Shown in pieces: positions 1 to 64,000 of a stretch of DNA of 64,000 bases (position 1 is its first letter; every line of letters begins with the position of its first letter). The notes beneath the pieces are model-generated. The model was given only the letters and a program-made list of their open reading frames with translations, was not told where the DNA came from and made no database searches. Both the position numbers and the translations under genes were made by a program. Origin of the DNA: Selaginella moellendorffii (lineage: Eukaryota > Plantae > Lycopodiophyta); the NCBI RefSeq assembly GCF_000143415.4, contig NW_003314280.1:496001-560000 (forward strand). Reading direction: 5' to 3'.

Positions 1-448
1 ACTATACTTTTGGAACCCCCTGCAGCCCCCCCCCCCTGGGAGACGCACGCTTTGGGCTTTCACCCCTTGACCCGTATTAGTATTTGGACTTAGTCTCTGG
101 CTCGATCTCGGACCCGATTTCGGATCCGACTTCGGATTCGGGTTCGGACTCGATCACGGACTCGATCTCGGACCCGATCTCGGACCCGACCTCGGACTCG
201 ACCTCGGACTCGGTCTCGGACCCGATTTCGGATCCGGACTCCGTCTCGAACTCGGTCTCGAACTCGGACTCGAACTCGGTCCCCGAGTCGGTCTCGGATT
301 CGATTCCGGACTCTATCTCGAACTCGGTCCTAGAGTCGGTCTTGGACTCGATCCTCGACTTGGTCCCATCCGATGAACTCTTTGTCACTTCGGTCAAGCT
401 TTTGGGGATCCTTTAGCCTACGACATCTCGGGGAGTCGGTTCCTTACA
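1..448 (-). repeat. 3' LTR of family A copy 1 (partial)
   Basis: Direct repeat of 6383-6830; begins TGTAAGGAAC on the minus strand right after the PPT. Confidence 0.96.
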
Positions 449-460
449 ACTCCACCACCC
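449..460 (-). promoter_or_regulatory. Polypurine tract (PPT) of family A copy 1
   Basis: GGGTGGTGGAGT immediately 5' of the 3' LTR on the minus strand. Confidence 0.8.
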
Positions 461-756: not shown

Positions 757-1233
757 TGGTCGACCTATCCAACCCATGCTAATTAGCTTACCTTTGGCGC
801 GCCTTCGGGTCCCAACATATGCCATTTGCTCAACTTTGCAAATTGATATTTTTAATTGAATTTTGCATAAGTACATAAAGTTCTGCCTTACAGAAATTCC
901 TCCACTAGATCTCGTGCGTTCGCTAGGTTCTCCTCCGGTTCCCATGTTGCTTCGCAGTGTGGAAATCCTTTCCACTTCACATGGAACTCTCTCACCTCGC
1001 GTCCTTGTCGCTTGCTCTTGCGCGCATTGAGGATGGCCTCGACTTCGTATTCCTCTTCCCCTTGGATAACCTCAGGTAAAGGTCTCACTTGGTCCTTGCG
1101 AAGCGGATCCTCAAAGTACGGCTTGAGTAAGTTCACGTGGAACACTGGGTGCATCTTCCCCATCTCTCGAGGAAGTCGGAGTCGGTAAGCCACTTTACCG
1201 ATTCGTGCCTCAATTTCATAAGGCCCCGCGAAC

Positions 1234-1285
1234 CTGCTTAAGGAACTCAAGATCAATTCATTTACAGGAATACATGCGTCTTTAC
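1234..1285 (-). other. Intron 2 in integrase of family A copy 1 (52 nt, GT-AG)
   Basis: CAAAG|GTAAAG...TTAAGCAG|GTTC; removal joins KLTQR to FAGPY. Confidence 0.88.
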
Positions 1286-1703
1286 CTTTGGGTCAACTTT
1301 CGGCTGATCCAGCTTGGTAGTCTGAGGTTCTTGGTGTTCAGCCACACCTTCTCCCCAGCTTGGAACTCCACATCCCGACGCTTTTGGTTCGCGTACTTAG
1401 TTTGCCTTTGTTGAGCCCGTTCCAAGGAATCCCTCACTAGATTCCAAATGTTGAGTCTTTCCGCCGTGAATGCCTCCACTGCGGGTAACTCTCCATGATA
1501 CTCGGCCACGCCGAGTTCCACAGGACCTTCAATAGCTCGCCCATTGATGACTTCCCATGGACTCACCCCGATGCTTGAGTGTGGTGAGTTGTTATAACAC
1601 ATTTCCGCAAGTCCCAAATGACTTACCCAGTCGGTCTGGTCTCCCGAGACATAGCATCGCAAATAATCCTCCAGCTGCCTATTCACCCTTTCCGTTTGTC
1701 CGT

Positions 1704-1750
1704 CTGTCAAGAAGTGTTAGTGCCATCAATCTTGACTTAATACCCATTAC
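1704..1750 (-). other. Intron 1 in integrase of family A copy 1 (47 nt, GT-AG)
   Basis: ACAG|GTAATG...CACTAAC...TTGACAG|ACGG; removal restores HPQTDGQTERVN. Confidence 0.9.
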
Positions 1751-4700
1751 CTGTCTGTGGGTGATAGGCTGTGCTGAATTTCAATTTGGTGCGATACTGT
1801 TCTAGGAGTGTCCTCCAGAACCTACTAGTGAAGATCTTATCTCGATCTGAGATAATCTCTTCCGGCCTTCCCCGCACTCGAACCACTTGTTCAAAGAACA
1901 GCTTCGCCACACCTTCTGCATCCACGTCCGTTGTGGTGGGTATGAAATGTGCCATCTTTGAAAATCGGTCCACCACCACGAATATCGCATCAAACCCCTC
2001 GCTTGGGGGTAGTCCCGTGATGAAGTCCATCGTAAGACATTTCCACGGGCGATCTGGAATTGGGATGCTTTGCAACAAGCCCCCACTAGCCTTAGTCACG
2101 GCTTTGACCTGCTGACATGTTGGACATGTCTTTACATAGTCTTGGACGTCCTTAGCCATATCTGGCCAATGGTACTTCCTCTTGAGTAAGCCCATCGTCT
2201 TGGGCACTCCGCCGTGTCCCGCAAGAGGTCCGTCATGACACTCTTCTAAGGCCACCTTCCTTAGTTCCCCTTCTGGAACATACACCCTCGTTTGCTTGTA
2301 ATAAATGAGTCCGTTGCGTTCCGCATAGCCCGTTTTCTCTTCCGTTGGCAGCTCACCTCTCTGGTGAGCTTCCCGCGCCTCTAGATTCCTCAGCAACACT
2401 TCTTGTGCTAGACCATCGTTCTCATATGCTGTCCGCACATCGTCCCAGAAGGTTGCTGTTGCGCTGGATATTGCCAACTTCAAGCTCGCTTTTCGACTTA
2501 GCGCATCCGCCACGATGTTGCTCTTCCCAGGCTTGTACAGAATTTCGCAATCAAACTCGGCCAAGGCATTGGCCCACCGACCTTGTTTCCCTCTTAGGTC
2601 GGGCTGTGACAAGAAGTGTTTCGTCGCCACATTGTCCGTGTAAACCTTGAAGTGTCTCCCAAGGTAGTGTCGCCACTCCTTGAGTGCCTTGACCACCGCA
2701 AACAATTCCTTCTCATGGGCAGGCCACTTCCGTTGAGCCTTGTCCAGCTTCTTCGAGAAGAACGCTACCGGATGGTTGTCTTGCTTCAGGACTGCGCCCA
2801 ACGCAAAGTCCGAAGCATCCGTTTCTACCTCAAAGTCCTTACCAAAGTCTGGCAATGCCAATACGGGAGCCTTCCTCAACTTCCCTTTGAGGTGGACGAA
2901 TGCCGCCTCGCATTCTGCTGTCCATACCATCTTCCCTTTTCCTGTTTGGTCCGTTAAGGGCAGGGCTACTCTCGAATAGTGTCTGATAAACTTTCGATAG
3001 TAGTTGCATAGCCCCAGGAACGCCCTCAACTCATGTACATTCGATGGTCGCTCCCATTCCTGGATCGCTTGGACCTTCTCCGGGTCCACCTTGAGCCCGT
3101 CCTGGCCCACCACATGCCCGAGAAACTTTACCTCTTGTTGAGCAAAGTCACATTTGCTCTCTTTAGCATACAGCTTGTGTTCCCTTAGTTTCTCAAACAC
3201 CTTCGCCAAGTGTTCGGCATGCTCTTCTAGCGTCTCGCTATAGATCAGGATGTCGTCGATATAGACGACCACGAAGTGATCCAGATAGGGTACAAAGACG
3301 TGGTTCATTAGCGCCGAAAACGTTGCCGGCGCATTACATAGCCCGAAGGGCATCACCAGAAACTCAAAGCTCCCATACCTCGTTCGACAGGTTGTCTTCT
3401 CGACATCTTCCTCGGCTACCCTGATCTGGTAGTATCCTGACCTTAGGTCAATCCTCGAGAAGTATTTTGCCTTTCCCAACCTATCGAACAGGTCCTCAAT
3501 CCTTGGCAAAGGGTACTTGTTCTTCTTTGTATACTTGTTGAGCAAGCGGTAGTCTATGCACATGCGCATAGATCCATCTTTCTTTTTCACAAATAACACC
3601 GGCGCCCCATACGGCGACTTGCTCAACCTAACATACCCTTTGTCCACCAACTCCTCTAGTTGGCACTTGAGCTCCTTGAGTTCTTTTTCGTTCAAACGAT
3701 AAGGGGGACGAACCACTGCCTCAGCACCCTCGACCAGCTCAATCTTATGTTCTATCGGTCGTGCTGGGGGCAGCCCCGCCGGTAGCTCCTCCGGCATGGT
3801 ATCCTGGAATTGGTCCAACACCCGCTGGATCACTAAAGGCACTTCTTCCGTTCTTGTCTTTTTGTCACTCTTCACCGAGAGTAAGCACAAAAAGGCTGCC
3901 TTAGTTCCTTTAGTGAGTTGTCCTCTCGTGGACACCAGGTTTAAGCAGGATTCTTTGGCCTTGCTTTGCCCTACCTTTAGATCCTGGGCTTCCACCCTAG
4001 ATCTTCTTCCTTGGGCATTCGCCAGTACCACAAGGTTCCTACCTTGTCCATGTAGGGCTACCACGAACCGATTGAACCAATCCATTCCGAAGATCACGTC
4101 AAATCCCGCCATGTCCAACACGGTGAAATCCATGTCTACCTTCCAAGTCCCTACTTCGACTTTCGCTTGTCGAAGTACCTCATCGGTGCTTTGGCTACCT
4201 TGAACAAACTCTATAGTCCTTGGTTCGCCTAGCCGCTGCACCGTTAGTCCGGCTTGCCGGACTATGTCTGCAGCCACAAAATTATCCGAAGCACCCGTGT
4301 CAATAAGGATCTTAACAAAGCTACCTCCGAGCTTCCCTCGGAGGGCTAGTAGATGTCGCGAACGACTCTCTACCAAAGTTGCTCGTGTAATGAGTAACTT
4401 TGAGTTAGGGACTGGATCACATACCTCATTTTGGACTTCGCCCGACTTGATGGCCATATTGGCTCTGGCCTTCTTCGGGTAGGGACATTCCCTTGAAAAG
4501 TGTCCCGCTTCACCGCAGTTATAGCATACGTTGTTTCCCACGCTGCTATATGACTTGACCTTCTTATCCGTGGGTTTGTCTCTTTTCGCTTGACTCCCCC
4601 ACGTACTTGCTCGCTGGCCACCGGATTTGCCTTTCCGAAATCCCGAGGACTCATTCTTAGAGAAACTCTTCTTGAATTTCCCCCTGCTATATGTTCCCCT

Positions 4701-5667
4701 CGGTTTGGCCCCTTTGTGAAATGTGGATCCCGACCCCGTCGTGTTCCCCTTTCGCAGGTTATCGTTGAAATGCACCTTGATGGCCGCATCCAACGCTTCC
4801 TTGTAGTTGGTCGGGTTCCAGCGCATCACCTCACCGCGAGCCCAGGTTTGCAAACCTGATATAAAGGCATGGAACGCATCCATATCCCCCATGTCCGTGA
4901 CAAGTATCCTCTTTGCCATGAACCCATTCACATATTCCTGGATGGTTCCAGTCTGCTTCAGCCTACTCAGCTCATCTCTCAAATGCAGAGTGGCATTCGG
5001 AGGAACGTATGTCGCGCGGATCCTCGCCTTCATCATGTCCCAGGTGGCCACCGGTCCTTCGTTGGCCTCCGTTGTTCTCCACCAAGACTTGGCATTATCT
5101 GCCAAGTATGGTTTTGCACATGGGACCTTCTCCGAGCTCGGTAACCGTAACGCTCGGAAGTAGTCCTCCATATCGTAAAACCAATCCTCCACAACCTTAT
5201 AGTCGTTCACTCCCTTGAACACCGGTGGGGGCTTTGGTTTGTACTTGGGAACTGCCTGAGGGACTGATTCCACTTCGGTCTGTTCGACCTTGTCTGGTTT
5301 TGCCTCAGTCCCTGCCGAAGGGTCCGCACCTTCTGCGCTGCCAGCATCCGCAGTCTTTCGCCTTTTCTTCCGTTTTTCGTCACGCTTTAGCTTGCGTACG
5401 AGAGTCTCCAGCAGGGCATTGGTCTACGCCAATTGACCTTCTAGAACGTCCAATCGAGCCTTGGACGACCGAACCTCGCCACCGGACTCCTGTTTGGAAG
5501 TTTCCTCACTAGAGTCCTCCTCATGCAAGGATTCCTCATCCATAGCCTCTTGTTCGACCGGAGGCTCCAGCTCTGGCGGAGGTTCTGTCTCCGCCTGGGT
5601 TCGCTTACGCCCTGCCCTTGCCATCTCCCAGCAATCCGCCTCTATCCTTCGCTAGAACTGAGGAGAA

Positions 5668-5680
5668 GGCTCCGATACCA
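5668..5680 (-). promoter_or_regulatory. Primer binding site, initiator tRNA-Met type
   Basis: TGGTATCGGAGCC 3 nt inside the 5' LTR, one mismatch to the canonical TGGTATCAGAGCC. Confidence 0.9.
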
Positions 5681-5683
5681 AAT

Positions 5684-6830
5684 TGTAAGCCACAAATTTT
5701 TCCTTTCCAATTTGCCAGTTTACCTCGCCTATCCGACCAACTCCGCCTTGGCTTGTGCTAAGTTCCCTCGCCAAGGTTCTCGCCTATGGTGCCAGCTCCT
5801 ACTTGGTTTCAACTACTTACTGCACGAGCAACGGAGTGTTAGCCATCCATCTACGGATTCCCAAATCTCTCCCAATCCCCCTCCCCGGGTTAGACTGGAC
5901 TTAAGGTTCGGCTACACTCCCCGCAGGCACAAGCAGCCAAGCACACCAAGCCTCCAGATTCCTAACTCCCCAAGGTATCACAAGGCTTGATCATGGGACC
6001 CTCTAAATCCCAAGCCTTGGGTGCAGCACTTGCTTCGGGACGTCGGGGCGAAACACCGTGGCCTAACGGCCCGGTATGGGTACCTCTAGCCCCCCTCTTC
6101 CATCCCGAAGGAAAGGCCCAAGCCCCCGGAAGGGCGAGGACCAATGAGCCACAAGGTACTCAAGTGGGGCACCACTCCACCTGAGCCGGGAGCACCGCAA
6201 TCGGTTTCCCTTTCGGGAGTGGGAGCTGCTCTTGAGCACTTCCTTGGATGGCCCCTCCGGCACCAGCCAAGTCCATGCTCACTCCCACCCAAGGCCCCTC
6301 GGTCCCAGTCCCAACCTCAAGTCGGTTTGGAAGCCCAACTGGAGAGTCCCTTCTAAACTGGTTCCTGGACCTCACTATCCCTACTATACTTTTGGAACCC
6401 CCTGCAGCCCCCCCCCCCTGGGAGACGCACGCTTTGGGCTTTCACCCCTTGACCCGTATTAGTATTTGGACTTAGTCTCTGGCTCGATCTCGGACCCGAT
6501 TTCGGATCCGACTTCGGATTCGGGTTCGGACTCGATCACGGACCCGATCTCGGACCCGATCTCGGACCCGACCTCGGACTCGACCTCGGACTCGGTCTCG
6601 GACCCGATTTCGGATCCGGACTCCGTCTCGAACTCGGTCTCGAACTCGGACTCGAACTCGGTCCCCGAGTCGGTCTCGGATTCGATTCCGGACTCTATCT
6701 CGAACTCGGTCCTAGAGTCGGTCTTGGACTCGATCCTCGACTTGGTCCCATCCGATGAACTCTTTGTCACTTCGGTCAAGCTTTTGGGGATCCTTTAGCC
6801 TACGACATCTCGGGGAGTCGGTTCCTTACA
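5684..6830 (-). repeat. 5' LTR of family A copy 1 (1147 bp) with CpG-rich 6-nt-periodic tandem repeat at ~6480-6745
   Basis: TG...CA termini; same length as and near-identical to 57936-59082; repeat units such as TCGGAC/TCGATC/CCGATT. Confidence 0.96.
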
Positions 6831-28695: not shown

Positions 28696-28767
28696 GGGGT
28701 ATTCCGAGAATCGAACTCGGGACCTCTCGCACCCGAAGCGAGAATCATACCACTAGACCAAATACCC
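28696..28767 (-). tRNA. tRNA-Pro(CGG)
   Basis: GGGTATTTGGTCTAGTGGTATGATTCTCGCTTCGGGTGCGAGAGGTCCCGAGTTCGATTCTCGGAATACCCC; cloverleaf with CGG anticodon. Confidence 0.95.
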
Positions 28768-28904
28768 ATTTCGTTGTTATTATCATTCAATTTATCACAA
28801 CCCTAAACCCTATAAACCCCACACTATCCACTATCTTACACAAACTTTTAGAACGAACGAGAGAGAAAACGAGAGAGCAACGAAAGAGAAAAAGAGAAGC
28901 TCTT

Positions 28905-31900
28905 TCACACAAACATATGAAGCTCGGGCCGGCTGTAGATGTTCCTCTCGTCATCGTCGAGAATCGGATACGCCGCAACCAGCCCGTCCTGCGACCCGAT
29001 GTAGAGCGAGTTGTAAATCTTCCAGTACACCTCGCGGACCTTCCTCGCCGGATGGAACAGCCCCTGGAGGCAGTAGCTCAGCACGATCACTGGCCCCAGC
29101 GACACCCGCATCGCCTCGATCGCCTCCATCACCGCGTTGATTACGTGCGGCGACGTCTCGAAGATGTTCGGCCACACGTAGTTCATGAGATGGATGAGCG
29201 CGTCCTCGCACCCCAGCCCCGCCACCCCGAGCGCCATATGCTTCACCGCCGACGCCGCCGTCTGCCTGTGCACCAGGTCCCTGTCCATGAGCGCGTCCTC
29301 GAGCAGCGGCGTCACCGCGTAGATGTAGTCCTTCCCCATCTCGCCGATGTACTCGAACAGGAACGAGAGCGACTTGAGCACGCCGTTCTGGACGTTGAGC
29401 TCCGGGACCCGGTACTCGTTCATCAGCGCCGGCAGCACCGTGAAGGGCGAGCACGTCTCCGCCACGATGGCGATCGCCACCGTCGTGCACACCCGGTTCT
29501 GCCGCTCCTGCACCTTCAGATTGTTGAGCAGCGTCGCCAGCACGTCCTGCGGACCGATCGCCTTGGCGATGTAGCCGAACGTGTTCACCGTCGCGCGCCG
29601 GATCCCCTTCTTGTGCGCCTTGAGCATCTCCAGCAGCTCGAAGCAGATGCGCATCCACTCGCGCGCCGGGACGTAGTCGGCGCCGCGGTCCGCGATCCGG
29701 CCAACCAGGTCGATGCAGTTCTCCTGGACCTTCTCGTGCCTGTTCTTGAGGATGGGAGTGAGCCGCGGTAGCAGGTCCTTGATCGGGGGCGTCATCTTCG
29801 ACATGCCAATCACGTTGACGATGGCTTTCAGCGCGCCCAATATGGAGCCCAGCACCTCCGGGTACTCCTCACCCAGGTATTCGTACAGCACCACGCCTAA
29901 GTGTCCCATGAGCTGCTCCTCACCGCACTGCTTCATCACCACCGCGATCCGGGAGATCAAGTCCGCCGCCTGCTGCCGGACCTTTGCGCTCTTGTTGTTG
30001 AGCCGCCACTTGATCGTCCCGCATATCTGAGGCAAGTATGGCTTCGCGCGCTGGCCCATCGCGTTCACCACGGCTCCGAAACCGTTGAGCATCACGTTCG
30101 CGTCGTCGCTCGTCTGCTCCTGGAACGCGTACAGGATCCCGTCCACCAGAAACTCCTCCAGCCGGGAGTCGATGTCCGAAGCCCCCAGGTTGGACACCAC
30201 CTTCTCGATCGTTTCCATAACCATCCGCCTGTACGGCTCGCTCTCGTCCTTAAGATCTTCCACCACCCTGCTCACGATGTCCGAGACACCAACTTTGTTG
30301 GCAATCTCCACGGTGGTGTCGACCAGCTGCCTGTAGTTCCTGCGGTCCAATGCCATCCTCCTGACCCAAAAGAACTTGAAGTACTGCGGGAGTATCTCTG
30401 TCTTGATGTAGTCCGCTTCCACACCCTCGGTGCTCACGCACTGCTTCACCACCTTTAACACGATCTTCTTCATTTCTTCGTCAGGAGACTGGAATTCCCG
30501 GATCAGGATCACCATGACTTCTTTGGTGTAGTAGTTCGCATAGACTGCATCCATCAGCGGAATGATGAACCCGATGGCCTTCAAGAACGCAGCTAGAACC
30601 TTGCCCCTGTGATTCCTGATGCCCTTCCAGAGAGGCTTCAAAACCGAGTCGAAGCTTTCTATACCGTAAGGCGCGGCAGCCTCGGCCAGAGCAGCCAAGG
30701 AGAGCGCGGTAATAGTCTTCACCTTCTGATTCTCGTCGTTAAGACCGTGCTCGATGATCTCCACCAGTGACTTCAGGTGCGGCAGTACCGCACACCCCAT
30801 GAGAATTGCAATCTGCTGCACGATCTTGATGCCCGTGTGCCGCGCTTGCCACGACTTTTTGCTCTGACACACCGCCTTGAGGAACAGGAGAAGAGCTGGG
30901 ATACCAAGTGCCGAGGCCACAACACTGAACGCTCGAGCCGTAGTGTTTCTTACGTACTCATCGATGTTGTCAATGTCGGGCCTCATTGCAGCGATCATGG
31001 TAGCCAGCCCCGCCGCCTTGCTGAGATTCGAGATTATTTCTCGGCCTTCAACTCGAGCATAATAATCCTCGTCAATCAGCAGTGGCTCAATCACCACCAG
31101 GATCTTGTGCACGAACGGCCTGACCAGCTCGTCCAGTTTGTACAAGACCCTGTCGATGACTTTCACCAGAAGGTGGCGCTCCTGATCCTCAAGCGTGGGA
31201 GACATTAGCAGTGGCAAGATCTGGTTGAACAGTGGACCAGCCCCGAACTCCCGAGCCTTGTCCGTCAGCTGCCTCAAAGCCGTCTTCCTCTGCGGAGGAG
31301 TACCGTTCTTTACCTTAAGTAGGAGCTTCATGATCTTCCTCTCTTTGTTTTCTTCAGGTGACATCTCATGCTCCTCTTTCTCTTGCAGCAGAGCACTGAA
31401 GTACTGGTAGTCCTCGGGCTTGATGAAAGGCAGGCCCTCCGGGGTTTCCTTCGGCACGTCGTACTGCTGGTTGCGATCCTCCTCCGGAATAGAGTACAAA
31501 GGCGTGCCACCCATTGGCGTCGGTGTCGCCAGCAACTTCCTCGCCGGAGTTCTAATAGGCACGTAGGACGCAGGAGCTTCGAGTACCTTGTACCCCTCGG
31601 TCGGAAGAATTGCGTCCAAGTCCTCGTCCGAAAGCGGTCGATTCCGCTCCTCAATGTCTCTCTCCCATCGATACATGTTGTACTGCTCCGGAGTCATGGT
31701 TGCCGCTCGCAGAGCAATCTGTCCGGGAGTAGGAGTCGCAAGGTCGGCACCTCCCATCGGCGTGATCCCCGGAGTGTATCCCAGAGGTGTAGCTCCAAGG
31801 ATTGAAGGAGCACTTCCAACAGGTGTCTCATCCCAGCGAGAACGCTGCTTCTTGGGAGTGGCGGCTCCCGGTACGCCTCCAATGCTGGGTGTAGCATCCC

Positions 31901-32714
31901 ACGCCACGCCAGGACCAGGAGTGACACCACCGCCAGGTCGAGGCGTCTCGTCCCACCGGTTCCGCCTTGGAGTTACAGGAGTCGCATCCGCGGACGCAGC
32001 TTTCCCCGGAGCAGGAGTCGCGTCCCAGCGGCTTGGAGCTGGGGTTGGAGCATCGGGAGCGTCCCACTCTGAGATCTTGGCCTTCTTTGACTCCTCCTCC
32101 TCCTTCGCTAAGTCCCATCTGTTCTTCCGCTTGGCAGCGGCAGCAGCAGCAGCAGCCGCGGACGACAGCTGCGCTTTCGTCGGAGCCTCGGAGGGCTCCT
32201 CTTTCACTTTCTTCTCCGTCTCCTCTTGCTTCTTCTTCGCAATTGCCCGGAGAGTCTCTTCCTTGTCCCGCTTGAGCTTCTCGTCCATCATCACCTCGGC
32301 ATAAGTCCTGGTCGTGGGAGCTGGCGTCTTATCCCCCATGGCGAAGGCATCGTTTCTGTCTGGCGAGAGAGCTCTCTTAAACCTCGACTTGCGGTAGTCA
32401 TCCTCCCTCGCGGCGATGGGCTGCGGCTTCCTAAACCCCAGCTCCTCGTCTGTCACTTCTCCGCGTGGCATCTCCGCTAGCACAGATTTGGGCGCGGTGT
32501 ACGAGCTGAGCTGTCTACGCGATGCGCTAACCTGTTTCTCCCTCTCATTCCCGTCCTGATCCTCCTCCTCCTCGGTCGTGGCGATGGAATTCACATACTC
32601 CATCTTGTCCCCGTACAGATCATTGTCGAAACTTACAGATGAGAGCGCGGCGAGCTCCTGCTGCTTCTGCCGCCGCTCCTCCTGCACGCGCTCGATGTCG
32701 TCGTCCAATGCCAT
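28905..32714 (-). CDS. SF3B1: Splicing factor 3B subunit 1 (intronless CDS, 1269 aa)
   Basis: RWDETP repeats, [15 protein letters not shown] repeats [23 protein letters not shown]..., C-terminal [10 protein letters not shown]. Confidence 0.98.
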
Positions 32715-32914
32715 AGCTGGGAAGAATCCACACAGAGTGAAACCAAGAGCGCCAAGAGCGCCAAGAGCGCCAAGAACCCTACCTGGAAATGCGACGCCCT
32801 AAACTCCCAGGATACCCTAGCGCGCAAGGCCTATCTTTATAGTAGTGGAATGGACGGTTACGATCGTCTCACATACAACCAACGGCTGCTGACTTGCTTT
32901 CTTAGGAATATGCT

Positions 32915-54446: not shown

Positions 54447-57400
54447 TATGAGGTCCAAGTGTACAGCTAGTGTAGTGGGATTTTAGTAGCTATCAGATTG
54501 GTTTCAAGCCGAACCATTCACTTTTATATATAAGTTAGAGTTTTTGGGTTAATTGATATGCACATTTTTTGTATTCTCTTTTTATATTCTATACACTTAT
54601 ATTAGGGGCAACTTTGATTGTCCTTGAGAAATGCTAGGATTAAGATTTTTGTTTAAATCTAGCTTTTACATTGTCTAGTTCTTCCTTTTTTATTTCTTTT
54701 TTCAACTTCTTCTCTTTTGCTCTTTCTTTTTTGTTCATCTTCATGGTAGAGTAGTAGTCTTTTCCTCCTTTAACTCTAGAGTAGCAATTGATGCAATTGC
54801 TCGATGTTATATAATTGTAATTGAACAATTAAACTCAATTTATGGCAACATTCACGACGCGTGGTATAATTCCTTTTGCTCTTACTAGAGTTCTTCCGTG
54901 AGAATCCTAGGGATGATGTGTACCATTAATTCAATCCCTTCACGGTGATTGCCATATATCACATATATCATTTCTGGGATGATACTTGATGTTTGTATGA
55001 GTTTTTCATGTGTTTTCAAGGGACGACATACTGTGGTACGATGGTTTGAGTGCTGCCACTCGTGAGAATTAGAATATTCTCTCAAATATCTTTAAATGCA
55101 CATTTAAACATGTTGACAATTGTGATGATACCTTTTAACAATTGCATCGTCTTTGTCAAAAGCCATTTGATTCAATGATACAATTTAGTGTTTGTTGCTT
55201 GTGCGAAGCCAAATATGTCAGAGCGGATTAAACTGGGAATGTTGTGGCTAACACTTCATCAAGATCTGGTAGAACTTCTGCATGTATTTATTCTAACCAC
55301 CATTGATGGTGCCTTTTGTTTGGCATAACATTATAAAACATCACCTTTTCCACTTTTTGTTGTATGCCCTTTAGCTCTACTTCATGTGGGAGATGATCTT
55401 GTTCCAATAGAAGTTAATCTTACTACTACCTAAGTTCAGGGACTAAGACGAGGATGTGGTCATGGCAATGATGTCCATTGCTAGGCGTGTGATGAAGTTG
55501 GTCACACTTATTGGCATTGTCAGTGTTTTTTGGATTGGATGGAGACCTTGGCTTCAACAATATCCTATTGGTGCTATTGTACTGGAAGGTCTAGACACCA
55601 AAATGCATTCGGGAAATGAGGAGTCACATGAGTAACGGAGGGACCTTGCGCAAATAAGTCAATGACCCATCCATCTTTCTTTCGGGAGTATCATCAAGGG
55701 TTCACTCAGCACCAGTTCATATAGTATTTACTTTCCAAACTTATTTTAACAAAAGGTCTCCCATTATTCTCTTTATGTTGGCTGATACAAGCTCAAGTTT
55801 ATCTTCTATTGCTTGACTTGTTGCCACACATTGCCGTTTATATTTATGTCATGCAGTAGAGCCCGTTTTCATTCATTATGGCAACAATTGTACATATGTA
55901 TATGCACAGGATGAGGTGAACTTAGTTGCGTATATAGGAGATCTCGAGCTTGAGTTGTAAGCATTGCGGGTGGTGCTAAGTCAAGCTTTTGACCTCATCT
56001 TTGGTATGGATTGGTTGTAACATTATCATGTTAAATGTGATTTTAAGACTTCTCCCCCTTGTCTCATACTTCTTGATCTTTTTTCCATTCCTCTCACTTT
56101 TATACCTCTTTAGTCCTCTACTTCCATTACTTCCTCTTAAGTTTTTATCTTGTTCCTCTCTTTCTTTATCCGATCCCTCCAACAGTCGTTATGTTGTAGC
56201 AGTTGACTGAATCATGAAGGAGTATGCCAATCTTTTTGAATTTGACTTATTTTATGGGGCCAAGATTGCAACACGTCATCCTATTCCAACTAGGGATGCT
56301 CATCCCATCAAGGTTCTTGTTTATCATCAATCACTTAAAGAAATCAAGATTTTATATACAAATATCAAGAAGATGTTAGGAAAGGGAGTTATTTGAAAGT
56401 TATGGAGTCGTTGGGCATGTGAACCTCATCTTGTGACAAAGCCTGATGCAAGTATTCATTTCTTCATTGACTATCGTCCGTTAAACAAAGTGACAATCTT
56501 GGATATGTACGCTCTTCCTCACACTGCTGATCTCTTGGATTGTCTGGGGAGAAGTTGTTAATTCACCAAGTTAAATTTTGTTTTTGAGTATTAGCAAATA
56601 CTAATGGTTGAAGAAGATATTCCTAAGACTATTTTTCATACACTATTTAGTTTGTACTAGTTTTTGATGATGCCGTTTGGTTTGAACAATGTTCCAACAA
56701 CTTTCCAAAGGATGGTGGATGAGGTTCTTTATAATATGTCAAAGGTGACTATTGACTTCATCAATGATGTCTTGATCCACTCAAAAAGAACATGGGAGGA
56801 ATATGCCCTTGATGTTCGTAAGGTGTTAGATTGGCTACGGGAAGTTGGTTTAAAGCTGAAGTAGTCAAAATGCGTGTTTGGGTCCAAAGACATGATTTAT
56901 CTTGAGTATTGTATTTTTCATGAGGGTTTATAAGTTGATTCTAACAAACTTGTGGCTATTTTAAAGTTCCCTACTCCAAAATGTATGAATGATGTGTAAT
57001 GCTTCTTAGGCAAGGTGCAATATCTTAGTCATTTTGTTGATCATCTTTCTGATCACACAGTACTATTGTGAGAGTCGCTGAAGTCATCAACCTCATTTTT
57101 CATCTAGTTTACAGACTATAAGTGGGCATTCACAAATTTTAAAGAGCTATTGATAACTCCTTTTAATTTTGGCATATCCTAATTACACTTGACTTTTCAT
57201 TTTGTGCATAGATGCTTCTGATATCAACTTTAGTGGTGTGTTGATGCAAGAGAGTCCAAGTGTGATTGGTTAGTGCCATTTGATTAGATATATCAACCGT
57301 ACATTACAACTATTAAAGGTGAACTACTCCACGACAAAGGAAAAGTGTTTAGCAGTAGTTTAGGGTTTCGAGAAACTTCATACATATTTACATGGTTCTC

Positions 57401-57935
57401 AGACATTACTAAAAGGTGGCCATACTACAGTTATTTCATTATTGAATCAGAAGAATTTGGTTGGCTGTACTATTTGATAAGTTTTGAAGCTTCAAATATA
57501 TAATTTTGATGTTGTTCATCTAATACTAATGCTCTTTCTTGAGCTCCTCTTCCTTTTTCATTCTCTTCTCATGTTTCTAATGCCAGCATCTATGGATTTT
57601 TTGGATGAGGATTCCGTGGTATTGCCAATTGTTGTACTTGATGTTCAGTGTTCATAAGGTGCAGAGCAAGATTTACCTTTTTCTAGTGAGGTTCACGAGG
57701 CCCAAAAGATTGAGCCATGGATTCGAAGGCTTTGTAATGGGTTTGAGAATCTTGCATCAGTTCCTGATAACTTGCCATTTCAGCATTTACATTCTCAATA
57801 TCACCTTGAAGATGGTCTTCTTTATTTTTTGGGGATAGATCCTAATGATCATTTATGGTTAATGGTGCCTTTGATCTTTATTCCACATTTTCTCCATGCC
57901 TACCATAATTCTCCTATTATATGTAGGCATATAAG
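54447..57935 (+). mobile_element. Decayed family B gypsy element (5' LTR ~54447-54601 through start of integrase), interrupted by family A copy 2
   Basis: Collinear with 13073-16770; pervasive C>T/G>A substitutions and stops. Confidence 0.9.
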
Positions 57936-59082
57936 TGTAAGGAACCGACTCCCCGAGATGTCGTAGGCTAAAGGATCCCCAAAAGCTTGACCGAAATGAC
58001 AAAGAGTTCATCGGATGGGACCAAGTCGAGGATCGAGTCCAAGACCGACTCTAGGACCGAGTTCGAGATAGAGTCCGGAATCGAGTCCGAGACCGACTCG
58101 GGGACCGAGTTCGAGTCCGAGTTCGAGACCGAGTTCGAGACAGAGTCTGGATCCGAAATCGGGTCCGAGACCGAGTCCGAGGTCGAGTCCGAGGTCGGGT
58201 CCGAGGTCGGGTCCGAGATCGAGTCTGTGATCGAGTCCGAACCCGAATCCGAAGTCGGATCCGAAATCGGGTCCGAGATCGAGCCAGAGACTAAGTCCAA
58301 ATACTAATACGGGTCAAGGGGTGAAAGCCCAAAGCGTGCGTCTCCCAGGGGGGGGGGGCTGCAGGGGGTTCCAAAAGTATAGTAGGGATAGTGAGGTCCA
58401 GGAACCAGTTTAGAAGGGACTCTCCAGTTGGGCTTCCAAACCGACTTGAGGTTGGGACTGGGACCGAGGGGCCTTGGGTGGGAGTGAGCATGGACTTGGC
58501 TGGTGCCGGAGGGGCCATCCAAGGAAGTGCTCAAGAGCAGCTCCCACTCCCGAAAGGGAAACCGATTGCGGTGCTCCCGGCTCAGGTGGAGTGGTGCCCC
58601 ACTTGAGTACCTTGTGGCTCATTGGTCCTCGCCCTTCCGGGGGCTTGGGCCTTTCCTTCGGGATGGAAGAGGGGGGGTAGAGGTACCCATACCGGGCCGT
58701 TAGGCCACGGTGTTTCGCCCCGACGTCCCGAAGCAAGTGCTGCTCCCAAGGCTTGGGATTTAGAGGGTCCCATGATCAAGCCTTGTGATACCTTGGGGTG
58801 TTAGGAATCTGGAGGCTTGGTGTGCTTGGCTGCTTGTGCCTGCGGGGAGTGTAGCCGAACCTTAAGTCCAGTCTAACCCGGGGAGGGGGATTGGGAGAGA
58901 TTTGGGAATCCGTAGATGGATGGCTAACACTCCGTTGCTCGTGCAGTAAGTAGTTGAAACCAAGTAGGAGCTGGCACCATAGGCGAGAACCTTGGCGAGG
59001 GAACTCAGCACAAGCCAAGGCGGAGTTGGTCGGATAGGCGAGGTAAGCTGGCAAATTGGAAAGGAAAAATTTGTGGCTTACA
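57936..59082 (+). repeat. 5' LTR of family A copy 2 (1147 bp)
   Basis: TGTAAG...GCTTACA; inverted near-identical copy of 5684-6830. Confidence 0.96.
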
Positions 59083-59141
59083 ATTTGGTATCGGAGCCTC
59101 TTCCTCAGTTCTAGCGAAGGATAGAGGCGGATTGCTGGGAG

Positions 59142-62100
59142 ATGGCAAGGGCAGGACGTAAGCGAACCCAGGCGGAGACGGAACCTCCTCCAGAGCTGGA
59201 GCCTCCGGTCGAACAGGAGGCGATGGATGAGGAATCCTTGCATGAGGAGGACTCCAGTGAGGCAACCTCCAAACAGGAGTCTGGTGGTGAGGTTCGGTCG
59301 TCCAAGGCTCGATTGGATGTTCTAGAAGGACAATTGGCACAGACCAATGCCCTGCTAGAGACTCTCGTACACAAGCTAAAGCGTGACGAGAAGCGGAAGA
59401 AAAAGCGAAAGACTGCGGATGCTGGCAGCGCAGAAGGTGCGGACCCTTCGGCAGGGACTGAGGCAAAACCAGACAAGGTCGAACAGACCGAAGTGGAATC
59501 AGTCCCTCAGGCAGTTCCCAAGTACAAACCGAAGCCCCCACCGGTCTTCAAGGGAGTGAACGACTATAAGGTGGTGGAGGATTGGTTTTACGATATGGAG
59601 GACTACTTCCGAGCGTTGCGATTACCGAGCTCGGAGAAGGTCCCATGTGCAAAACCATACTTGGCAGATAATGCCAAGTCTTGGTGGAGAACAACGGAGG
59701 CCAACGAAGGACCGGTGGCCACTTGGGAAATGATGAAGGCGAGGATCCGCGCGACATACGTTCCTCCGAATGCCACTCTGCATCTGAGAGATGAGCTGAG
59801 TAGGCTGAAGCAGACTGGAACCATCCAGGAATATGTGAATGGGTTCATGGCAAAGAGGATACTTGTCACGGACATGGGGGATATGGATGCGTTCCATGCC
59901 TTTATATCAGGTTTGCAAACCTGGGCTCGCGGTGAGGTGATGCGCTGGAACCCGACCAACTACAAGGAAGCGTTGGATGCGGCCATCAAGGTGCATTTCA
60001 ACGATAACCTGCGAAAGGGGAACACGACGGGGTCGGGATCCACGTTTCACAAAGGGGCCAAACCGAGGGGAACATATAGCAGGGGGAAATTCAAGAAGAG
60101 TTTCTCTAAGAATGAGTCCTCGGGATTCCGGAAAGGCAAATCCGGTGGCCAGCGAGCAAGTACGTGGGGGAGTCAAGCGAAAAGAGACAAACCCACGGAT
60201 AAGAAGGTCAAGTCATATAGCAGCGTGGGAAACAACGTATGCTACAACTGCGGTGAAGCGGGACACTTTTCAAGGGAATGTCCCTACCCGAAGAAGGCCA
60301 GAGCCAATATGGCCATCAAGTCGGGTGAAGTCCAAAATGAGGTATGTGATCCAGTCCCTAACTCAAAGTTACTCATTACACGAGCAACTTTGGTAGAGAG
60401 TCGTTCGCGACATCTACTAGCCCTCCGAGGGAAGCTCGGAGGTAGCTTTGTTAAGATCCTTATTGACACGGGTGCTTCGGATAATTTTGTGGCTGCAGAC
60501 ATAGTCCGGCAAGCCGGACTAACGGTGCAGCGGCTAGGCGAACCAAGGACTATAGAGTTTGTTCAAGGTAGCCAAAGCACCGATGAGGTACTTCGACAAG
60601 CGAGAGTCGAAGTGGGGACTTGGAAGGTGGACATGGATTTCACCGTGTTGGACATGGCGGGATTTGACGTGATCTTCGGAATGGACTGGTTCAATCGATT
60701 CGTGGTAGCCCTGCATGGTCAAGGTAGAAACCTTGTGGTACTGGCGAATGCCCAAGGAAGAAGATCTAGGGTGGAAGCCCAGGATCTAAAGGTAGGGCAA
60801 AGCAAGGCCAAAGAATCCTGCTTAAACCTGGTGTCCACAAGAGGACAACTCACTAAAGGAACTAAGGCAGCCTTTTTGTGCTTACTCTCGGTGAAGAGTG
60901 ACAAAAAGACAAGAACGGAAGAAGTGCCTTTAGTGATCCAGCGAGTGTTGGACCAATTCCAGGATACCATGCCGGAGGAGCTACCGGCGGGGTTGCCCCC
61001 CGCACGACCGATAGAACATAAGATTGAGCTGGTCGAGGGCGCTGAGGCAGTGGTTCGTCCACCCTATCGTTTGAACGAAAAGGAACTCAAGGAGCTCAAG
61101 TGCCAACTAGAGGAGTTGGTGGACAAAGGGTATGTTAGGTTGAGCAAGTCGCCGTATGGGGCGCCGGTATTATTTGTGAAAAAGAAAGATGGATCTATGC
61201 GCATGTGCATAGATTACCGGTTGCTCAACAAGTATACCAAGAAGAACAAGTACCCTTTGCCAAGGATTGAGGACCTGTTCGATAGGTTGGGAAAGGCAAA
61301 ATACTTCTCGAGGATTGACCTAAGGTCAGGATACTACCAGATCAGGGTAGCTGAGGAAGATGTCGAGAAGACAACCTGTCGAACAAGGTATGGGAGCTTT
61401 GAGTTTCTAGTGATGCCCTTTGGGCTCTGCAATGCGCCGGCAACGTTTTCGGCGTTGATGAACCACATCTTTGTACCCTATCTGGATCACTTCGTGGTCG
61501 TCTATATTGACGACATCCTGATCTATAGCGAGACGCTAGAGGAGCATGCCGAACACTTGGCGAAGGTGTTTGAGAAACTAAGGGAACACAAACTGTATGC
61601 TAAAGAGAGCAAATGTGACTTTGCTCAACAAGAGGTAAAGTTTCTCGGGCATGTGGTGGGCCAGGACGGGCTCAAGGTGGACCCGGAGAAGGTCCAAGCG
61701 ATCCAGGAATGGGAGCGACCATCGAATGTACATGAGTTGAGGGCGTTCCTGGGGCTATGCAACTACTATCGAAAGTTTATCAGACACTATTCGAGAGTAG
61801 CCCTACCCTTAACGGACCAAACAGGAAAAGGGAAGATGGTATGGACAGCAGAATGCGAGGCGGCATTCGTCCACCTCAAAGGGAAGTTGAGGAAGGCTCC
61901 CGTATTGGCATTGCCAGACTTTGGTAAGGACTTTGAGGTAGAAACGGATGCTTCGGACTTTGCGTTGGGCGCAGTTCTGAAGCAAGACAACCATCCGGTA
62001 GCGTTCTTCTCGAAGAAGCTGGACAAGGCTCAACGGAAGTGGCCTGCCCATGAGAAGGAATTGTTTGCGGTGGTCAAGGCACTCAAGGAGTGGCGACACT

Positions 62101-63914
62101 ACCTTGGGAGACACTTCAAGGTTTACACGGACAATGTGGCGACGAAACACTTCTTGTCACAGCCCGACCTAAGAGGGAAACAAGGTCGGTGGGCCAATGC
62201 CTTGGCCGAGTTTGATTGCGAAATTCTGTACAAGCCTGGGAAGAGCAACATCGTGGCGGATGCGCTAAGTCGAAAAGCGAGCTTGAAGTTGGCAATATCC
62301 AGCGCAACAGCAACCTTCTGGGACGATGTGCGGACAGCATATGAGAATGATGGTCTAGCACAAGAAGTGTTGCTGAGGAATCTAGAGGCGCGGGAAGCTC
62401 ACCAGAGAGGTGAGCTGCCAACGGAAGAGAAAACGGGCTATGCGGAACGCAACGGACTCATTTATTACAAGCAAACGAGGGTGTATGTTCCAGAAGGGGA
62501 ACTAAGGAAGGTGGCCTTAGAAGAGTGTCATGACGGACCTCTTGCGGGACACGGCGGAGTGCCCAAGACGATGGGCTTACTCAAGAGGAAGTACCATTGG
62601 CCAGATATGGCTAAGGACGTCCAAGACTATGTAAAGACATGTCCAACATGTCAGCAGGTCAAAGCCGTGACTAAGGCTAGTGGGGGCTTGTTACAAAGCA
62701 TCCCAATTCCAGATCGCCCGTGGAAATGTCTTACGATGGACTTCATCACGGGACTACCCCCAAGCGAGGGGTTTGATGCGATATTCGTGGTGGTGGACCG
62801 ATTTTCAAAGATGGCACATTTCATACCCACCACAACGGACGTGGATGCGGAAGGTGTGGCGAAGCTGTTCTTTGAACAAGTGGTTCGAGTGCGGGGAAGG
62901 CCGGAAGAGATTATCTCAGATCGAGATAAGATCTTCACTAGTAGGTTCTGGAGGACACTCCTAGAACAGTATCGCACCAAATTGAAATTCAGCACAGCCT
63001 ATCACCCACAGACAGGTAATGGGTATTAAGTCAAGATTGATGGCACTAACACTTCTTGACAGACGGACGAACGGAAAGGGTGAATAGGCAGCTGGAGGAT
63101 TATTTGCGATGCTATGTCTCGGGAGACCAGACCGACTGGGTAAGTCATTTGGGACTTGCGGAAATGTGTTATAACAACTCACCACACTCAAGCATCGGGG
63201 TGAGTCCATGGGAAGTCATCAATGGGCGAGCTATTGAAGGTCCTGTGGAACTCGGCGTGGCCGAGTATCATGGAGAGTTGCCCGCGGTGGAGGCATTCAC
63301 GGCGGAAAGACTCAACATTTGGAATCTAGTGAGGGATTCCTTGGAACGGGCTCAACAAAGGCAAACCAAATACGCGAACCAGAAGCGTCGGGATGTAGAG
63401 TTCCAAGCTGGGGAGAAGGTGTGGCTGAACACCAAGAACCTCAGACTACCAAGTGGGATCAGCCGAAAGTTGACCCAAAGGTAAAGATGCATGTATTCCC
63501 GTAAATGAATTGATCTTGAGTTCCTTAAGCAGGTTCGCGGGGCCTTACGAGATTGAGGCACGAATCGGTAAAGTGGCTTACCGACTCCGACTTCCTCGAG
63601 AGATGGGGAAGATGCACCCAGTGTTCCACGTGAACTTACTCAAGCCGTACTTTGAGGATCCGCTTCGCAAGGACCAAGTGAGACCTTTACCTGAGGTTAT
63701 CCAAGGGGAAGAGGAATACGAAGTCGAGGCCATCCTCAATGCGCGCAAGAGCAAGCGACAAGGACGCGAGGTGAGAGAGTTCCATGTGAAGTGGAAAGGA
63801 TTTCTACACTGCGAAGCAACATGGGAACCGGAGGAGAACCTAGCAAACGCACGAGATCTAGTGGAGGAATTTCTGCAAGGCAGAACTTTATGTACTTATG
63901 CAAAATTCAATTAA
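59142..63914 (+). CDS. Gag-Pol polyprotein with chromodomain, 1557 aa after splicing; exons 59142-63015, 63063-63480, 63533-63914
   Basis: Exon lengths 3874+418+382=4674 nt form one frame; all gypsy domains plus chromodomain present. Confidence 0.92.
63016..63062 (+). other. Intron 1 in integrase of family A copy 2 (47 nt)
   Basis: GTAATG...CACTAAC...GACAG, identical to 1704-1750. Confidence 0.9.
63481..63532 (+). other. Intron 2 in integrase of family A copy 2 (52 nt)
   Basis: GTAAAG...TAAGCAG; two substitutions relative to 1234-1285. Confidence 0.88.
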
Positions 63915-64000
63915 AAATATCAATTTGCAAAGTTGAGCAAATGGCATATGTTGGGACCCGAAGGCGCGCCAAAGGTAAGCTAATTAGCATGGGTTGGATA

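What the first reader, a model, noticed from the sequence alone, without database searches (positions are those of the whole stretch)
63016..63532. LTR retrotransposon whose integrase is split by two retained spliceosomal-type introns (splice-gated integrase)
Seen: the 1295-aa gag-pol ORF stops at ...[10 protein letters not shown], and the rest of integrase and the chromodomain lie in two other frames. The gaps are AT-rich 47-nt (63016-63062) and 52-nt (63481-63532) segments with G|GTAA donors and CAG acceptors; intron 1 has a CTAAC branch-point motif. Their sizes match host-gene introns in this window. Excision rebuilds [12 protein letters not shown] and KLTQ-R-FAGPY to the nucleotide and yields a 1557-aa polyprotein. 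Known: the Glu of GxTER is the third residue of the DDE triad, and elements copied through spliced RNA should lose introns. The spliced plant LTR elements I know of (Ogre, copia subgenomic gag RNAs) splice elsewhere, not inside the integrase core. Inference: unspliced RNA is the packaged genome and encodes Gag-PR-RT-RH with a dead integrase stub, while only doubly spliced RNA makes active integrase plus chromodomain. Host splicing would then set integrase dose. I cannot check the literature for prior description.
Basis: partly seen in the sequence, partly recalled or inferred. Interest (0 to 1): 0.95.

Follow-up and report, generated by a model that had tools for sequence, protein, structure and literature searches.

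The report
Intron-split integrase in Selaginella retrotransposon
A high-copy jumping gene of the spikemoss Selaginella (the published SM1-Galahad element) has its integrase gene cut by two tiny intron-like segments that survive copying through RNA, which would explain why it was described as having no intact copy.

Summary
The window is Selaginella moellendorffii scaffold GL377584.1. It holds two copies, 98.4% identical, of a Ty3/gypsy chromovirus. In both, the 1295-aa gag-pol ORF stops four codons into a 47-nt GT..AG segment. The rest of integrase and the SH3 and chromodomain parts follow in two other frames across a 52-nt GT..AG segment. Removing both gives a 1557-codon reading frame that aligns without gaps to 13 intronless relatives. 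The Glu of the D,D35E triad lies four codons into exon 2. Differences between the copies are strongly synonymous only in the spliced frames (exon 2: 7 synonymous, 2 not; 0/8 and 1/7 in the other frames), so intron-bearing lineages have been replicating under selection. The element matches the published SM1-Galahad (2012): 1295-aa ORF, two short downstream ORFs, hundreds of copies, "no intact copy". That paper never mentions introns. Its sister SM2-Galahad has one 1577-aa ORF. Best reading: real spliceosomal introns retained in the packaged RNA, whose removal is needed for complete integrase. No RNA evidence could be obtained, and "splice-gated dose" remains inference. This is a new variant of the Ogre-type intron-bearing LTR retrotransposon.

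The parts
57936..59083 (+). Copy 1, 5' LTR (1148 bp, TGTAAG...CTTACA). It holds a 12-nt-unit tandem array at 58031-58283 and a G11 tract at 58347-58357.
59087..59099 (+). Copy 1, primer-binding site TGGTATCGGAGCC, tRNA-Met-like, 3 nt after the LTR.
   Evidence: It matches the 13-bp tRNA-Met PBS reported for SM1-Galahad. That it resembles the tRNA-Met primer sequence rests on my own knowledge.
59142..63015 (+). Copy 1, exon 1: gag (CCHC), protease, RT, RNase H, integrase zinc domain, and the integrase core up to ...AYHPQT. This carries the two Asp but not the Glu. Unspliced, the ORF runs on to the stop at 63027-63029 (1295 aa).
63016..63062 (+). Intron 1: 47 nt, phase 1, GTAATG donor without +5 G, CTAAC branch motif 63046-63050, acceptor GACAG. 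A 7-bp hairpin GUCAAGA/UCUUGAC encloses the branch site.
63063..63480 (+). Exon 2: the rest of the integrase core, (D)GRTERVN...KLTQ(R), including the catalytic Glu.
63481..63532 (+). Intron 2: 52 nt, phase 2, GTAAAG donor without +5 G, TTGAT branch candidate, tandem AAG/CAG acceptor. TAA lies in frame at its very start.
63533..63914 (+). Exon 3: integrase C-terminal SH3-like domain and an HP1-like (group I) chromodomain, then the stop.
63915..64000 (+). Copy 1, start of the 3' untranslated region. The element runs off the window end.
5683..6830 (-). Copy 2, 5' LTR.
1751..5624 (-). Copy 2, exon 1. It has a premature stop in gag at 5424-5426, where copy 1 has Gln at 59340.
1704..1750 (-). Copy 2, intron 1, identical to copy 1.
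1286..1703 (-). Copy 2, exon 2. It has 9 differences from copy 1, 7 of them synonymous in the spliced frame.
1234..1285 (-). Copy 2, intron 2: same length, 2 substitutions, both outside the splice signals.
852..1233 (-). Copy 2, exon 3. It has a stop at 888-890, near the C-terminus.
1..460 (-). Copy 2, polypurine tract (450-460) and the first 448 bp of the 3' LTR, cut by the window start. There is 1 difference in 448 from its own 5' LTR.

Best explanation
The element is SM1-Galahad, a Galadriel-related Ty3/gypsy chromovirus of Selaginella moellendorffii. Its integrase gene carries two genuine short spliceosomal (GT-AG) introns.

The RNA that is reverse-transcribed keeps both introns, so new copies inherit them. 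Three products are possible:
- Unspliced RNA translates into Gag-PR-RT-RNase H plus an integrase stub that lacks the catalytic Glu.
- Removing intron 1 alone restores the D,D35E core, but translation stops at the first codon of intron 2.
- Removing both introns yields the full 1557-aa polyprotein with the SH3-like domain and chromodomain.

Complete integrase therefore depends on host splicing.

Shown here: the anatomy, the exact restoration of conserved sequence, retention in two diverged lineages, and purifying selection on exons 2 and 3 in the spliced frames.

Inferred: that splicing occurs, that only unspliced RNA is packaged, and that partial splicing limits the amount of integrase. The last is suggested by both donors lacking the +5 G; I give it roughly 0.4.
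For: 1. Canonical signals and exact frame restoration.

2. Gapless alignment of both junctions to 13 intronless homologues. The spliced product is collinear with a 1561-aa intronless relative.

3. Substitutions between the two copies:
- exon 1: 60 synonymous, 7 non-synonymous;
- exon 2: 7/2 in the spliced frame, against 0/8 and 1/7 in the other frames;
- omega 0.03 for exon 1 and 0.08 for exons 2+3, at dS about 0.06-0.08.

4. Copy 2's own LTRs differ at 1 of 448 sites, but the two copies differ at 6-7 of 448. Most of the divergence therefore arose in replicating lineages that carried both introns.

5. Intron 2 lies inside a high-divergence tract and itself carries 2 substitutions, so the diverged lineage also had the intron.

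6. Apart from the two segments, copy 1 has no stop or frameshift in 4674 nt.

7. The published SM1-Galahad consensus, built from hundreds of copies, has the same 3885-bp ORF and downstream ORFs of 316 and 309 bp. The window has 318 and 309 bp. The interruptions are therefore family-wide.

8. Host introns of 53 and 59 nt are inferred in the same window. The host's intron-length distribution is of the fungal, short-peaked type (PMC6157073).
Against: - There is no transcript evidence of any kind. No S. moellendorffii copies or cDNAs of this family exist in the protein or contig collections searched.
- Only two copies were read directly.
- The 47- and 52-nt introns are shorter than any host intron I could infer here (53-87 nt).
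- Both donors deviate from the GTAAGT seen in the host introns.
- If spliced RNA could be packaged, intronless and fully competent copies should arise and spread. Nothing here explains why they have not.
- The 2012 authors found no intact copy.
- Divergence between the two copies is mosaic (0.3% to 6.3% per 300 bp), so recombination complicates the selection argument.
Confidence: 0.75

Rival explanations
1. The two segments are inactivating insertions fixed in a non-autonomous family. SM1-Galahad makes no integrase of its own and is mobilised in trans, for example by the closely related intronless SM2-Galahad.
For: The 2012 description found no intact SM1-Galahad copy, and an intact single-ORF sister family sits in the same genome. 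Copy 2 has extra stop codons. There is no RNA evidence for splicing.
Against: - Two independent random insertions would not both start GTAA, end CAG, carry branch motifs, and leave conserved residues and spacing exactly restorable.
- Exons 2 and 3 would then be untranslated, yet they show omega about 0.08, and only in the spliced frames.
- The diverged tract around intron 2 kept the intron, so it was not imported from an intronless donor.
Confidence: 0.12
2. The introns are real and are spliced efficiently like any host intron. They have no regulatory role and are neutral passengers. A minor unspliced fraction happens to be what is packaged.
For: The evidence is the same structural evidence as for the best explanation. 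The introns are typical of the host in type and composition. Nothing measured here speaks to dose.
Against: - Both donors lack the +5 G present in the inferred host introns.
- Each intron places a stop codon at or within four codons of its start, giving defined truncated products.
- Persistence over about 7% synonymous divergence and hundreds of copies, without replacement by intronless cDNA copies, suggests either a benefit or a packaging rule.
Confidence: 0.3
3. The gaps are crossed at translation, not by splicing. The ribosome would hop between matched codons, ACA to ACA over 47 nt and AGG to AGG over 52 nt, the latter followed by a stop as in phage T4 gene 60.
For: The direct repeats ACAG and AGGT at the boundaries provide matched take-off and landing codons. 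TAA follows the second take-off codon.
Against: - The repeats are simply what the AG|GT splice consensus produces.
- The first site has no stop after its take-off codon.
- From my own knowledge, programmed bypassing is known only in phage T4 and some yeast mitochondria, not on cytosolic eukaryotic ribosomes.
- GT-AG ends, a branch motif and host-like size are unexplained by this model.
Confidence: 0.02

Closest known systems
SM1-Galahad (Novikov, Smyshlyaev & Novikova 2012, PMC3350952)
   Same: Same host. About 7.5 kb, LTRs about 1.1 kb with a poly-G tract, and a 13-bp tRNA-Met PBS. The ORF is 3885 bp and 1295 aa. Two short downstream ORFs follow, and the last carries a group I chromodomain. 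This is almost certainly the same family.
   Different: The paper treats the layout as a consensus of a family without intact copies, and it never mentions introns or splicing. Here the interruptions are read as two introns. On that reading copy 1 is intact, and copy 2 is a young insertion with LTRs identical at 447 of 448 sites.
SM2-Galahad (same paper)
   Same: Described as closely related. Same genome, hundreds of copies, tRNA-Met PBS, group I chromodomain, 7.35 kb.
   Different: One uninterrupted 4731-bp ORF of 1577 aa. The introns were therefore either gained in the SM1 lineage or lost in SM2.
Ogre (Tat lineage Ty3/gypsy elements of legumes)
   Same: An LTR retrotransposon whose polyprotein ORF is interrupted by an intron. 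The intron is kept in genomic copies, is spliced from only part of the transcripts, and must be removed to translate the downstream part.
   Different: Ogre has one intron, in a gap that averages 274 bp between gag-protease and RT, so it gates all of Pol. Here two introns of about 50 nt lie inside integrase, in a chromovirus, and gate only the integrase Glu and the SH3 and chromodomain parts. Splicing is shown by experiment for Ogre and not here.
Subgenomic gag RNAs of Ty1/copia elements (Drosophila copia, BARE, EVADE; sunflower Tyran and Varan)
   Same: Host splicing of retrotransposon RNA changes which proteins are made, while unspliced RNA serves as the genome.
   Different: In those elements splicing removes pol to raise Gag output, and the full ORF is uninterrupted in the unspliced RNA. 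Here the unspliced ORF is incomplete.
Penelope-like elements
   Same: Retroelements that keep introns through retrotransposition, including one in Selaginella.
   Different: They use a different mechanism (GIY-YIG endonuclease, target-primed) and their introns are mostly in the 5' UTR. They are called 'highly unusual among retroelements' for retaining introns.
Ginger DNA transposons and GIN host genes
   Same: Gypsy-type integrase coding sequences interrupted by 1-4 GT-AG introns.
   Different: They are DNA transposons or host genes with no RNA genome, so keeping introns poses no paradox.

Membership tests
Ty3/gypsy chromovirus (LTR retrotransposon) | Long terminal repeats ending TG...CA | tested here: met
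   LTR 57936-59083, TGTAAG...CTTACA. The same LTR flanks copy 2.
Ty3/gypsy chromovirus (LTR retrotransposon) | [quoted passage not shown] | tested here: met
   TGGTATCGGAGCC at 59087-59099. GGGTGGTGGAG at 450-460 of copy 2.
Ty3/gypsy chromovirus (LTR retrotransposon) | Domain order gag, PR, RT, RNase H, IN, with a chromodomain after IN | tested here: met
   Pfam hits in that order. Chromo and SH3_Tf2-1 are in exon 3.
Ty3/gypsy chromovirus (LTR retrotransposon) | Target-site duplication | not testable with these tools
   Both copies run off the window at their 3' ends.
SM1-Galahad family | ORF of 3885 bp and 1295 aa, followed by two short ORFs, the last with a group I chromodomain | tested here: met
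   59142-63026 is 3885 bp. ATG ORFs of 318 and 309 bp follow. The chromodomain has Y, W and F in the cage positions.
SM1-Galahad family | LTR longer than 1 kb with a poly-G tract of 11-25, and a 13-bp tRNA-Met PBS | tested here: met
   1148-bp LTR, G11 tract, 13-nt PBS.
SM1-Galahad family | At least 80% nucleotide identity to the published consensus | not testable with these tools
   The consensus sequence is not in the paper text or the held supplement.
U2-type spliceosomal intron | GT at the 5' end and AG at the 3' end | tested here: met
   Both segments, in both copies.
U2-type spliceosomal intron | Branch-site motif 10-40 nt upstream of the 3' end | tested here: met
   CTAAC with its A 13 nt upstream (intron 1). 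TTGAT with its A 19 nt upstream (intron 2).
U2-type spliceosomal intron | Length and composition within the host's range | tested here: inconclusive
   The segments are 47 and 52 nt with 62-63% A+T. Inferred host introns in the window are 53, 59 and about 64-87 nt, but those gene models were reconstructed, not given. The literature says the host has a fungal-type short-intron distribution.
U2-type spliceosomal intron | Removal restores the reading frame and conserved protein sequence | tested here: met
U2-type spliceosomal intron | Excised from RNA in vivo | not testable with these tools
   No transcript data were reachable. Protein and contig collections hold nothing close to this family.
Ogre-type intron-bearing LTR retrotransposon | Intron between the gag-protease ORF and the RT-RH-IN ORF; Tat/Ogre lineage | tested here: not met
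   Gag through the integrase core is one ORF. The introns lie inside integrase, and the element is a chromovirus. It works like Ogre but is not a member.
Programmed translational bypass (T4 gene 60 type) | Matched take-off and landing codons, with a stop right after take-off | tested here: inconclusive
   Matched codons exist at both gaps. A stop follows take-off only at the second gap. The other required signals were not examined.

The most novel reading that the evidence does not exclude
SM1-Galahad is an autonomous, recently active family of hundreds of copies that acquired two spliceosomal introns inside its integrase after splitting from intronless SM2-Galahad. The gain may have come from reverse splicing into its own genomic RNA, followed by its own reverse transcription. 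The family has kept the introns because only unspliced RNA is packaged. Host splicing would then act as an obligatory and limiting gate for active, chromodomain-bearing integrase. RNA spliced at intron 1 alone would give a chromodomain-less integrase. That would make it the first chromovirus with integrase expression under splicing control, and a natural system for watching intron gain and retention in a retroelement.
Probability: 0.35. Interest if true: 0.85.

Novelty: new variant of a known kind. Interest (0 to 1): 0.68.

Why it matters
Retroelements copied through RNA are expected to shed introns. Among LTR retrotransposons only Ogre is established as needing a splice to translate its polyprotein, and a 2025 review lists just Ogre and EVADE as intron-bearing plant elements.

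A chromovirus family with hundreds of copies that keeps two introns of about 50 nt inside the integrase catalytic core would have four consequences:
- It would overturn the published view that SM1-Galahad has no intact copies.
- It would show that annotation pipelines demanding one uninterrupted pol ORF misclassify such elements as dead.
- It would give a tractable case for asking how unspliced RNA is selected for packaging in plants.
- It would offer a dated contrast for intron gain or loss, SM1 against SM2, in a molecule that carries its own reverse transcriptase.

Tried and rejected
Searches for close relatives, with or without the introns, all failed:
- Integrase region of the 1295-aa ORF against proteins of 712-2266 aa: best 40-48% identity.
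- Exon 2 alone against proteins of 76-241 aa: nothing.
- Integrase N-terminal part against proteins of 163-518 aa: best about 50%, all contiguous through HPQTDGQTERVN.
- Exhaustive representative search with exon 2: best 50%.
- Metagenome loci: only short matches at 64% identity or less.
- The 1295-aa ORF is not a called gene anywhere on record.

The closest hits were followed up:
- A Logan contig ORF of 1561 aa and Haematococcus gene models are intronless.
- The metagenome family behind P0271 is degraded and uninformative.
- Many short proteins start 10 residues before GQTERVN. This looked like a shared intron, but it is explained by a conserved Met ([10 protein letters not shown]).

Host gene models:
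- Exhaustive splice-chain enumeration was underdetermined or timed out.
- A restricted search on the Smg8/9 3' end and Pfam-coordinate mapping of the O-FucT gene gave only a handful of plausible host introns.
- I looked for single-exon host genes near the element, to see how the public annotation treats it. None was found.

Other checks:
- Rfam on the tRNA-like 3' UTR found nothing, and ARAGORN found no tRNA there.
- SM-Tcn1 was considered as the identity and rejected: 5.7 kb, 440-bp LTRs, two ORFs, no PBS.
Full report
**Where the window comes from.** The 1269-aa intronless SF3b1 ORF at 28905-32714 (-) matches a called gene exactly. That gene lies on NCBI assembly GCA_000143415.2, scaffold GL377584.1. 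From my own knowledge this assembly is Selaginella moellendorffii, and the element's match to a published S. moellendorffii family (below) agrees. Window position plus 496000 gives the record position. Neighbouring called genes are ordinary plant genes: Smg8/9, O-fucosyltransferase, Yippee, an HD-ZIP III gene, CASP-like and PfkB.

**The observation.** It holds to the nucleotide.
- The ORF 59142..63029 is 1295 aa and ends [10 protein letters not shown].
- The reading continues in a second frame as DGRTERVN...KLTQR*. It then returns to the first frame as RFAGPYEIE... up to the stop at 63912-63914.
- The gaps are 63016-63062 (47 nt, GTAATG...CTAAC...GACAG) and 63481-63532 (52 nt, GTAAAG...AAGCAG). 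They are 62-63% A+T in a region of about 50% G+C.
- The joined coding sequence is 4674 nt, or 1557 codons plus a stop.
- Pfam places gag, a CCHC knuckle, protease, RT, RNase H, the integrase zinc domain and rve in exon 1. It places SH3_Tf2-1 and Chromo in exon 3.

**Anatomy of the element.**
- Copy 1 has a 1148-bp LTR (57936-59083, TGTAAG...CTTACA). The LTR holds a 12-nt-unit tandem array and a G11 tract.
- A tRNA-Met-like PBS lies at 59087-59099, and the gag ATG at 59142.
- Copy 1 runs off the window end.
- Copy 2 lies on the minus strand from 6830 down to 1. It aligns to copy 1 over 6068 nt at 98.4% identity without a single indel. Its polypurine tract is at 450-460, and the first 448 bp of its 3' LTR are present.
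- Both segments are present in copy 2 at the same positions and lengths. Intron 1 is identical and intron 2 has two substitutions.

**Is the excision exact?** I joined the three pieces with X at each junction codon and aligned them to 13 full-length relatives.
- Junction 1 falls on the invariant D of HPQ(T/S)-D-GQTE.
- Junction 2 falls on a column that is R, K or P.
- There is no gap at either place.
- The alternative acceptors of segment 2, which give 40- or 49-nt introns, keep the frame but add residues. The 52-nt form is therefore the one that fits. AAG/CAG also looks like a tandem acceptor.
- The spliced product is collinear with an intronless 1561-aa gag-pol ORF on a Logan contig.
- Counting from the SDRD aspartate, the Glu of GRTE is the 36th residue. 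It is therefore the E of D,D35E, four codons into exon 2.

**Are the downstream exons translated in the spliced frames?** The two copies differ at 98 sites.
- In exon 1, 60 changes are synonymous and 7 are not. In the two wrong frames the counts are 5/62 and 8/59.
- In exon 2 the counts are 7/2 in the frame reached by removing 47 nt, and 0/8 and 1/7 in the others.
- In exon 3 the counts are 3/2, against 1/4 and 1/4.
- Nei-Gojobori estimates give omega 0.027 for exon 1 and 0.08 for exons 2+3, with dS of 0.06-0.08.
- Copy 2's two LTRs differ at 1 of 448 sites, whereas the copies differ at 6-7 of 448. Most of the divergence therefore predates insertion and arose in replicating lineages under selection.
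- Intron 2 sits inside a high-divergence tract and has two substitutions of its own. The diverged lineage therefore carried the intron too.

This is the strongest argument against dead insertions. The caveat is that divergence is mosaic, from 0.3% to 6.3% per 300 bp, so recombination between lineages has occurred.

**Comparison with host introns.** I could not obtain exon tables.
- Full enumeration of splice chains that fit the called gene ranges and product lengths was underdetermined or timed out.
- For the 3' end of Smg8/9, the best-scoring solution has introns of 53 and 59 nt, each with a GTAAGT donor and a T-rich acceptor, plus one of about 63 nt.
- Pfam-coordinate mapping in the O-FucT gene suggests introns of about 64-87 nt.
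- The HD-ZIP III gene has 1246 nt of intron for 840 aa.
- One paper notes that this species' intron-length distribution clusters with fungi and is 'sharply different' from other land plants.
- The element's introns are therefore of the host's kind but at the short end. Both donors (GTAATG, GTAAAG) lack the +5 G of the inferred host donors. That is compatible with inefficient splicing but does not prove it.

**What the unspliced and partly spliced RNAs would encode.**
- Unspliced RNA gives Gag-PR-RT-RNase H and an integrase with its zinc domain and both Asp, but no Glu.
- RNA spliced at intron 1 only reaches KLTQR and then the TAA that begins intron 2. That is a complete core without the SH3-like domain and chromodomain.
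- Only doubly spliced RNA gives the full protein.
- Gag and pol share one frame with no recoding site. The introns are therefore the only visible device that makes part of Pol sub-stoichiometric.

**RNA folding.** An 11-bp pairing between exon 1 (GCCUAUCACCC) and exon 2 (GGGUGAAUAGGC) would loop out intron 1 (z = -2.8). A 7-bp hairpin encloses the branch site. These are leads only.

**Relatives elsewhere.** Nothing closer than about 50% identity exists in the collections searched. Every relative examined is contiguous across both sites. These include Haematococcus gene models and the Logan ORF. The unrelated gypsy element at 13738-17876 in this window reads AYHPQSDSLVEW without interruption. 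The introns are therefore specific to this lineage.

**What is already known.** The element matches SM1-Galahad of Novikov, Smyshlyaev and Novikova (2012, PMC3350952) on every reported number:
- about 7.5 kb;
- LTRs of 1076/1146 bp with a poly-G tract of 11-25;
- a 13-bp tRNA-Met PBS;
- a single ORF of 3885 bp and 1295 aa, with no chromodomain at its end;
- two further short ORFs of 316 and 309 bp, the last carrying a group I chromodomain. The window has 318 and 309 bp.

The authors report hundreds of copies at about 95% similarity. They found no intact copy and built a consensus. The words intron and splicing do not occur in the paper, and no other paper in the library mentions the family. 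Because their consensus has the same 1295-aa ORF, the interruption is family-wide and not peculiar to these two copies. The sister family SM2-Galahad has one ORF of 4731 bp and 1577 aa with the chromodomain.

Intron-bearing LTR retrotransposons are otherwise known from Ogre, where the intron lies between gag-protease and RT and is partly spliced. Splicing that makes gag-only RNAs is known from copia, BARE and EVADE. A December 2025 review says plant LTR retrotransposons 'generally lack introns' apart from Ogre and EVADE. Penelope-like elements are called 'highly unusual among retroelements' for keeping introns.

**Verdict.** The intron reading is well supported by sequence and evolutionary evidence but has no RNA support. 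The regulatory 'gate' is plausible inference. The element itself is already named, and the intron interpretation appears to be new. I rate it a new variant of a known kind (Ogre-like dependence on splicing), with an interest of 0.68.

Noticed in passing
window 57936-64000 against 766-6830: Divergence between the two copies is mosaic: 6.3% at 59136-59435, 0.33% at 61836-63035 and 3.3% at 63336-63635. Non-coding parts (LTR, leader, introns, 3' UTR) differ by 1.15%, against a dS of about 7%. This suggests recombination between sublineages, constraint on non-coding parts, or both.
   Followed up: partly
window 62997-63007 with 63080-63091: An exon 1 stretch, GCCUAUCACCC, can pair with an exon 2 stretch, GGGUGAAUAGGC, across intron 1 (z = -2.8, 2 of 200 shuffles fold as well). 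A 7-bp hairpin inside intron 1 encloses the CTAAC branch motif and abuts the 3' splice site.
   Followed up: partly
window 620-780, minus strand (3' UTR of copy 2): Two stretches resemble tRNA T-arms (GGTTCGAGTCCCAACC and GGGTTCAAGTCCCGACC). They lie between the chromodomain stop and the polypurine tract. ARAGORN and Rfam call nothing there.
   Followed up: partly
window 13738-17876 (+), 57003-57932, 6840-7147: A different Ty3/gypsy element has no chromodomain hit and an uninterrupted integrase motif. Fragments 75-78% identical to it lie directly upstream of the 5' LTRs of both SM1-Galahad copies. This suggests nesting in, or targeting of, the same repeat.
   Followed up: partly
window 888-890 and 5424-5426 (minus strand): Copy 2 has two nonsense changes relative to copy 1, one in gag and one near the C-terminus. 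Its LTRs are nevertheless 447/448 identical, so the defects were probably inherited from its template or arose very recently.
   Followed up: no
window 28696-36275: The splicing factor SF3b1 gene is a single 1269-aa exon. It sits head to head, about 200-250 bp apart, with the nonsense-mediated-decay factor gene Smg8/9. A tRNA-Pro(CGG) gene lies just past the SF3b1 stop.
   Followed up: no
window 58018-58283 and 58347-58357: The LTR carries about 21 copies of a 12-nt unit (GATCGAGTCCGA-like, with a higher-order period of 48) and a G11 tract. The published family description reports that tract as variable in length.
   Followed up: partly
proteins P0270-P0314: A metagenome-borne chromovirus family is the closest match to the integrase N-terminal part (47-54% identity). 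It has many ORFs ending at the same points...TERVNLVI(Q) and ...NYVAA(N)QQD. This could mark shared stops or introns at other integrase positions. The contigs looked degraded.
   Followed up: partly
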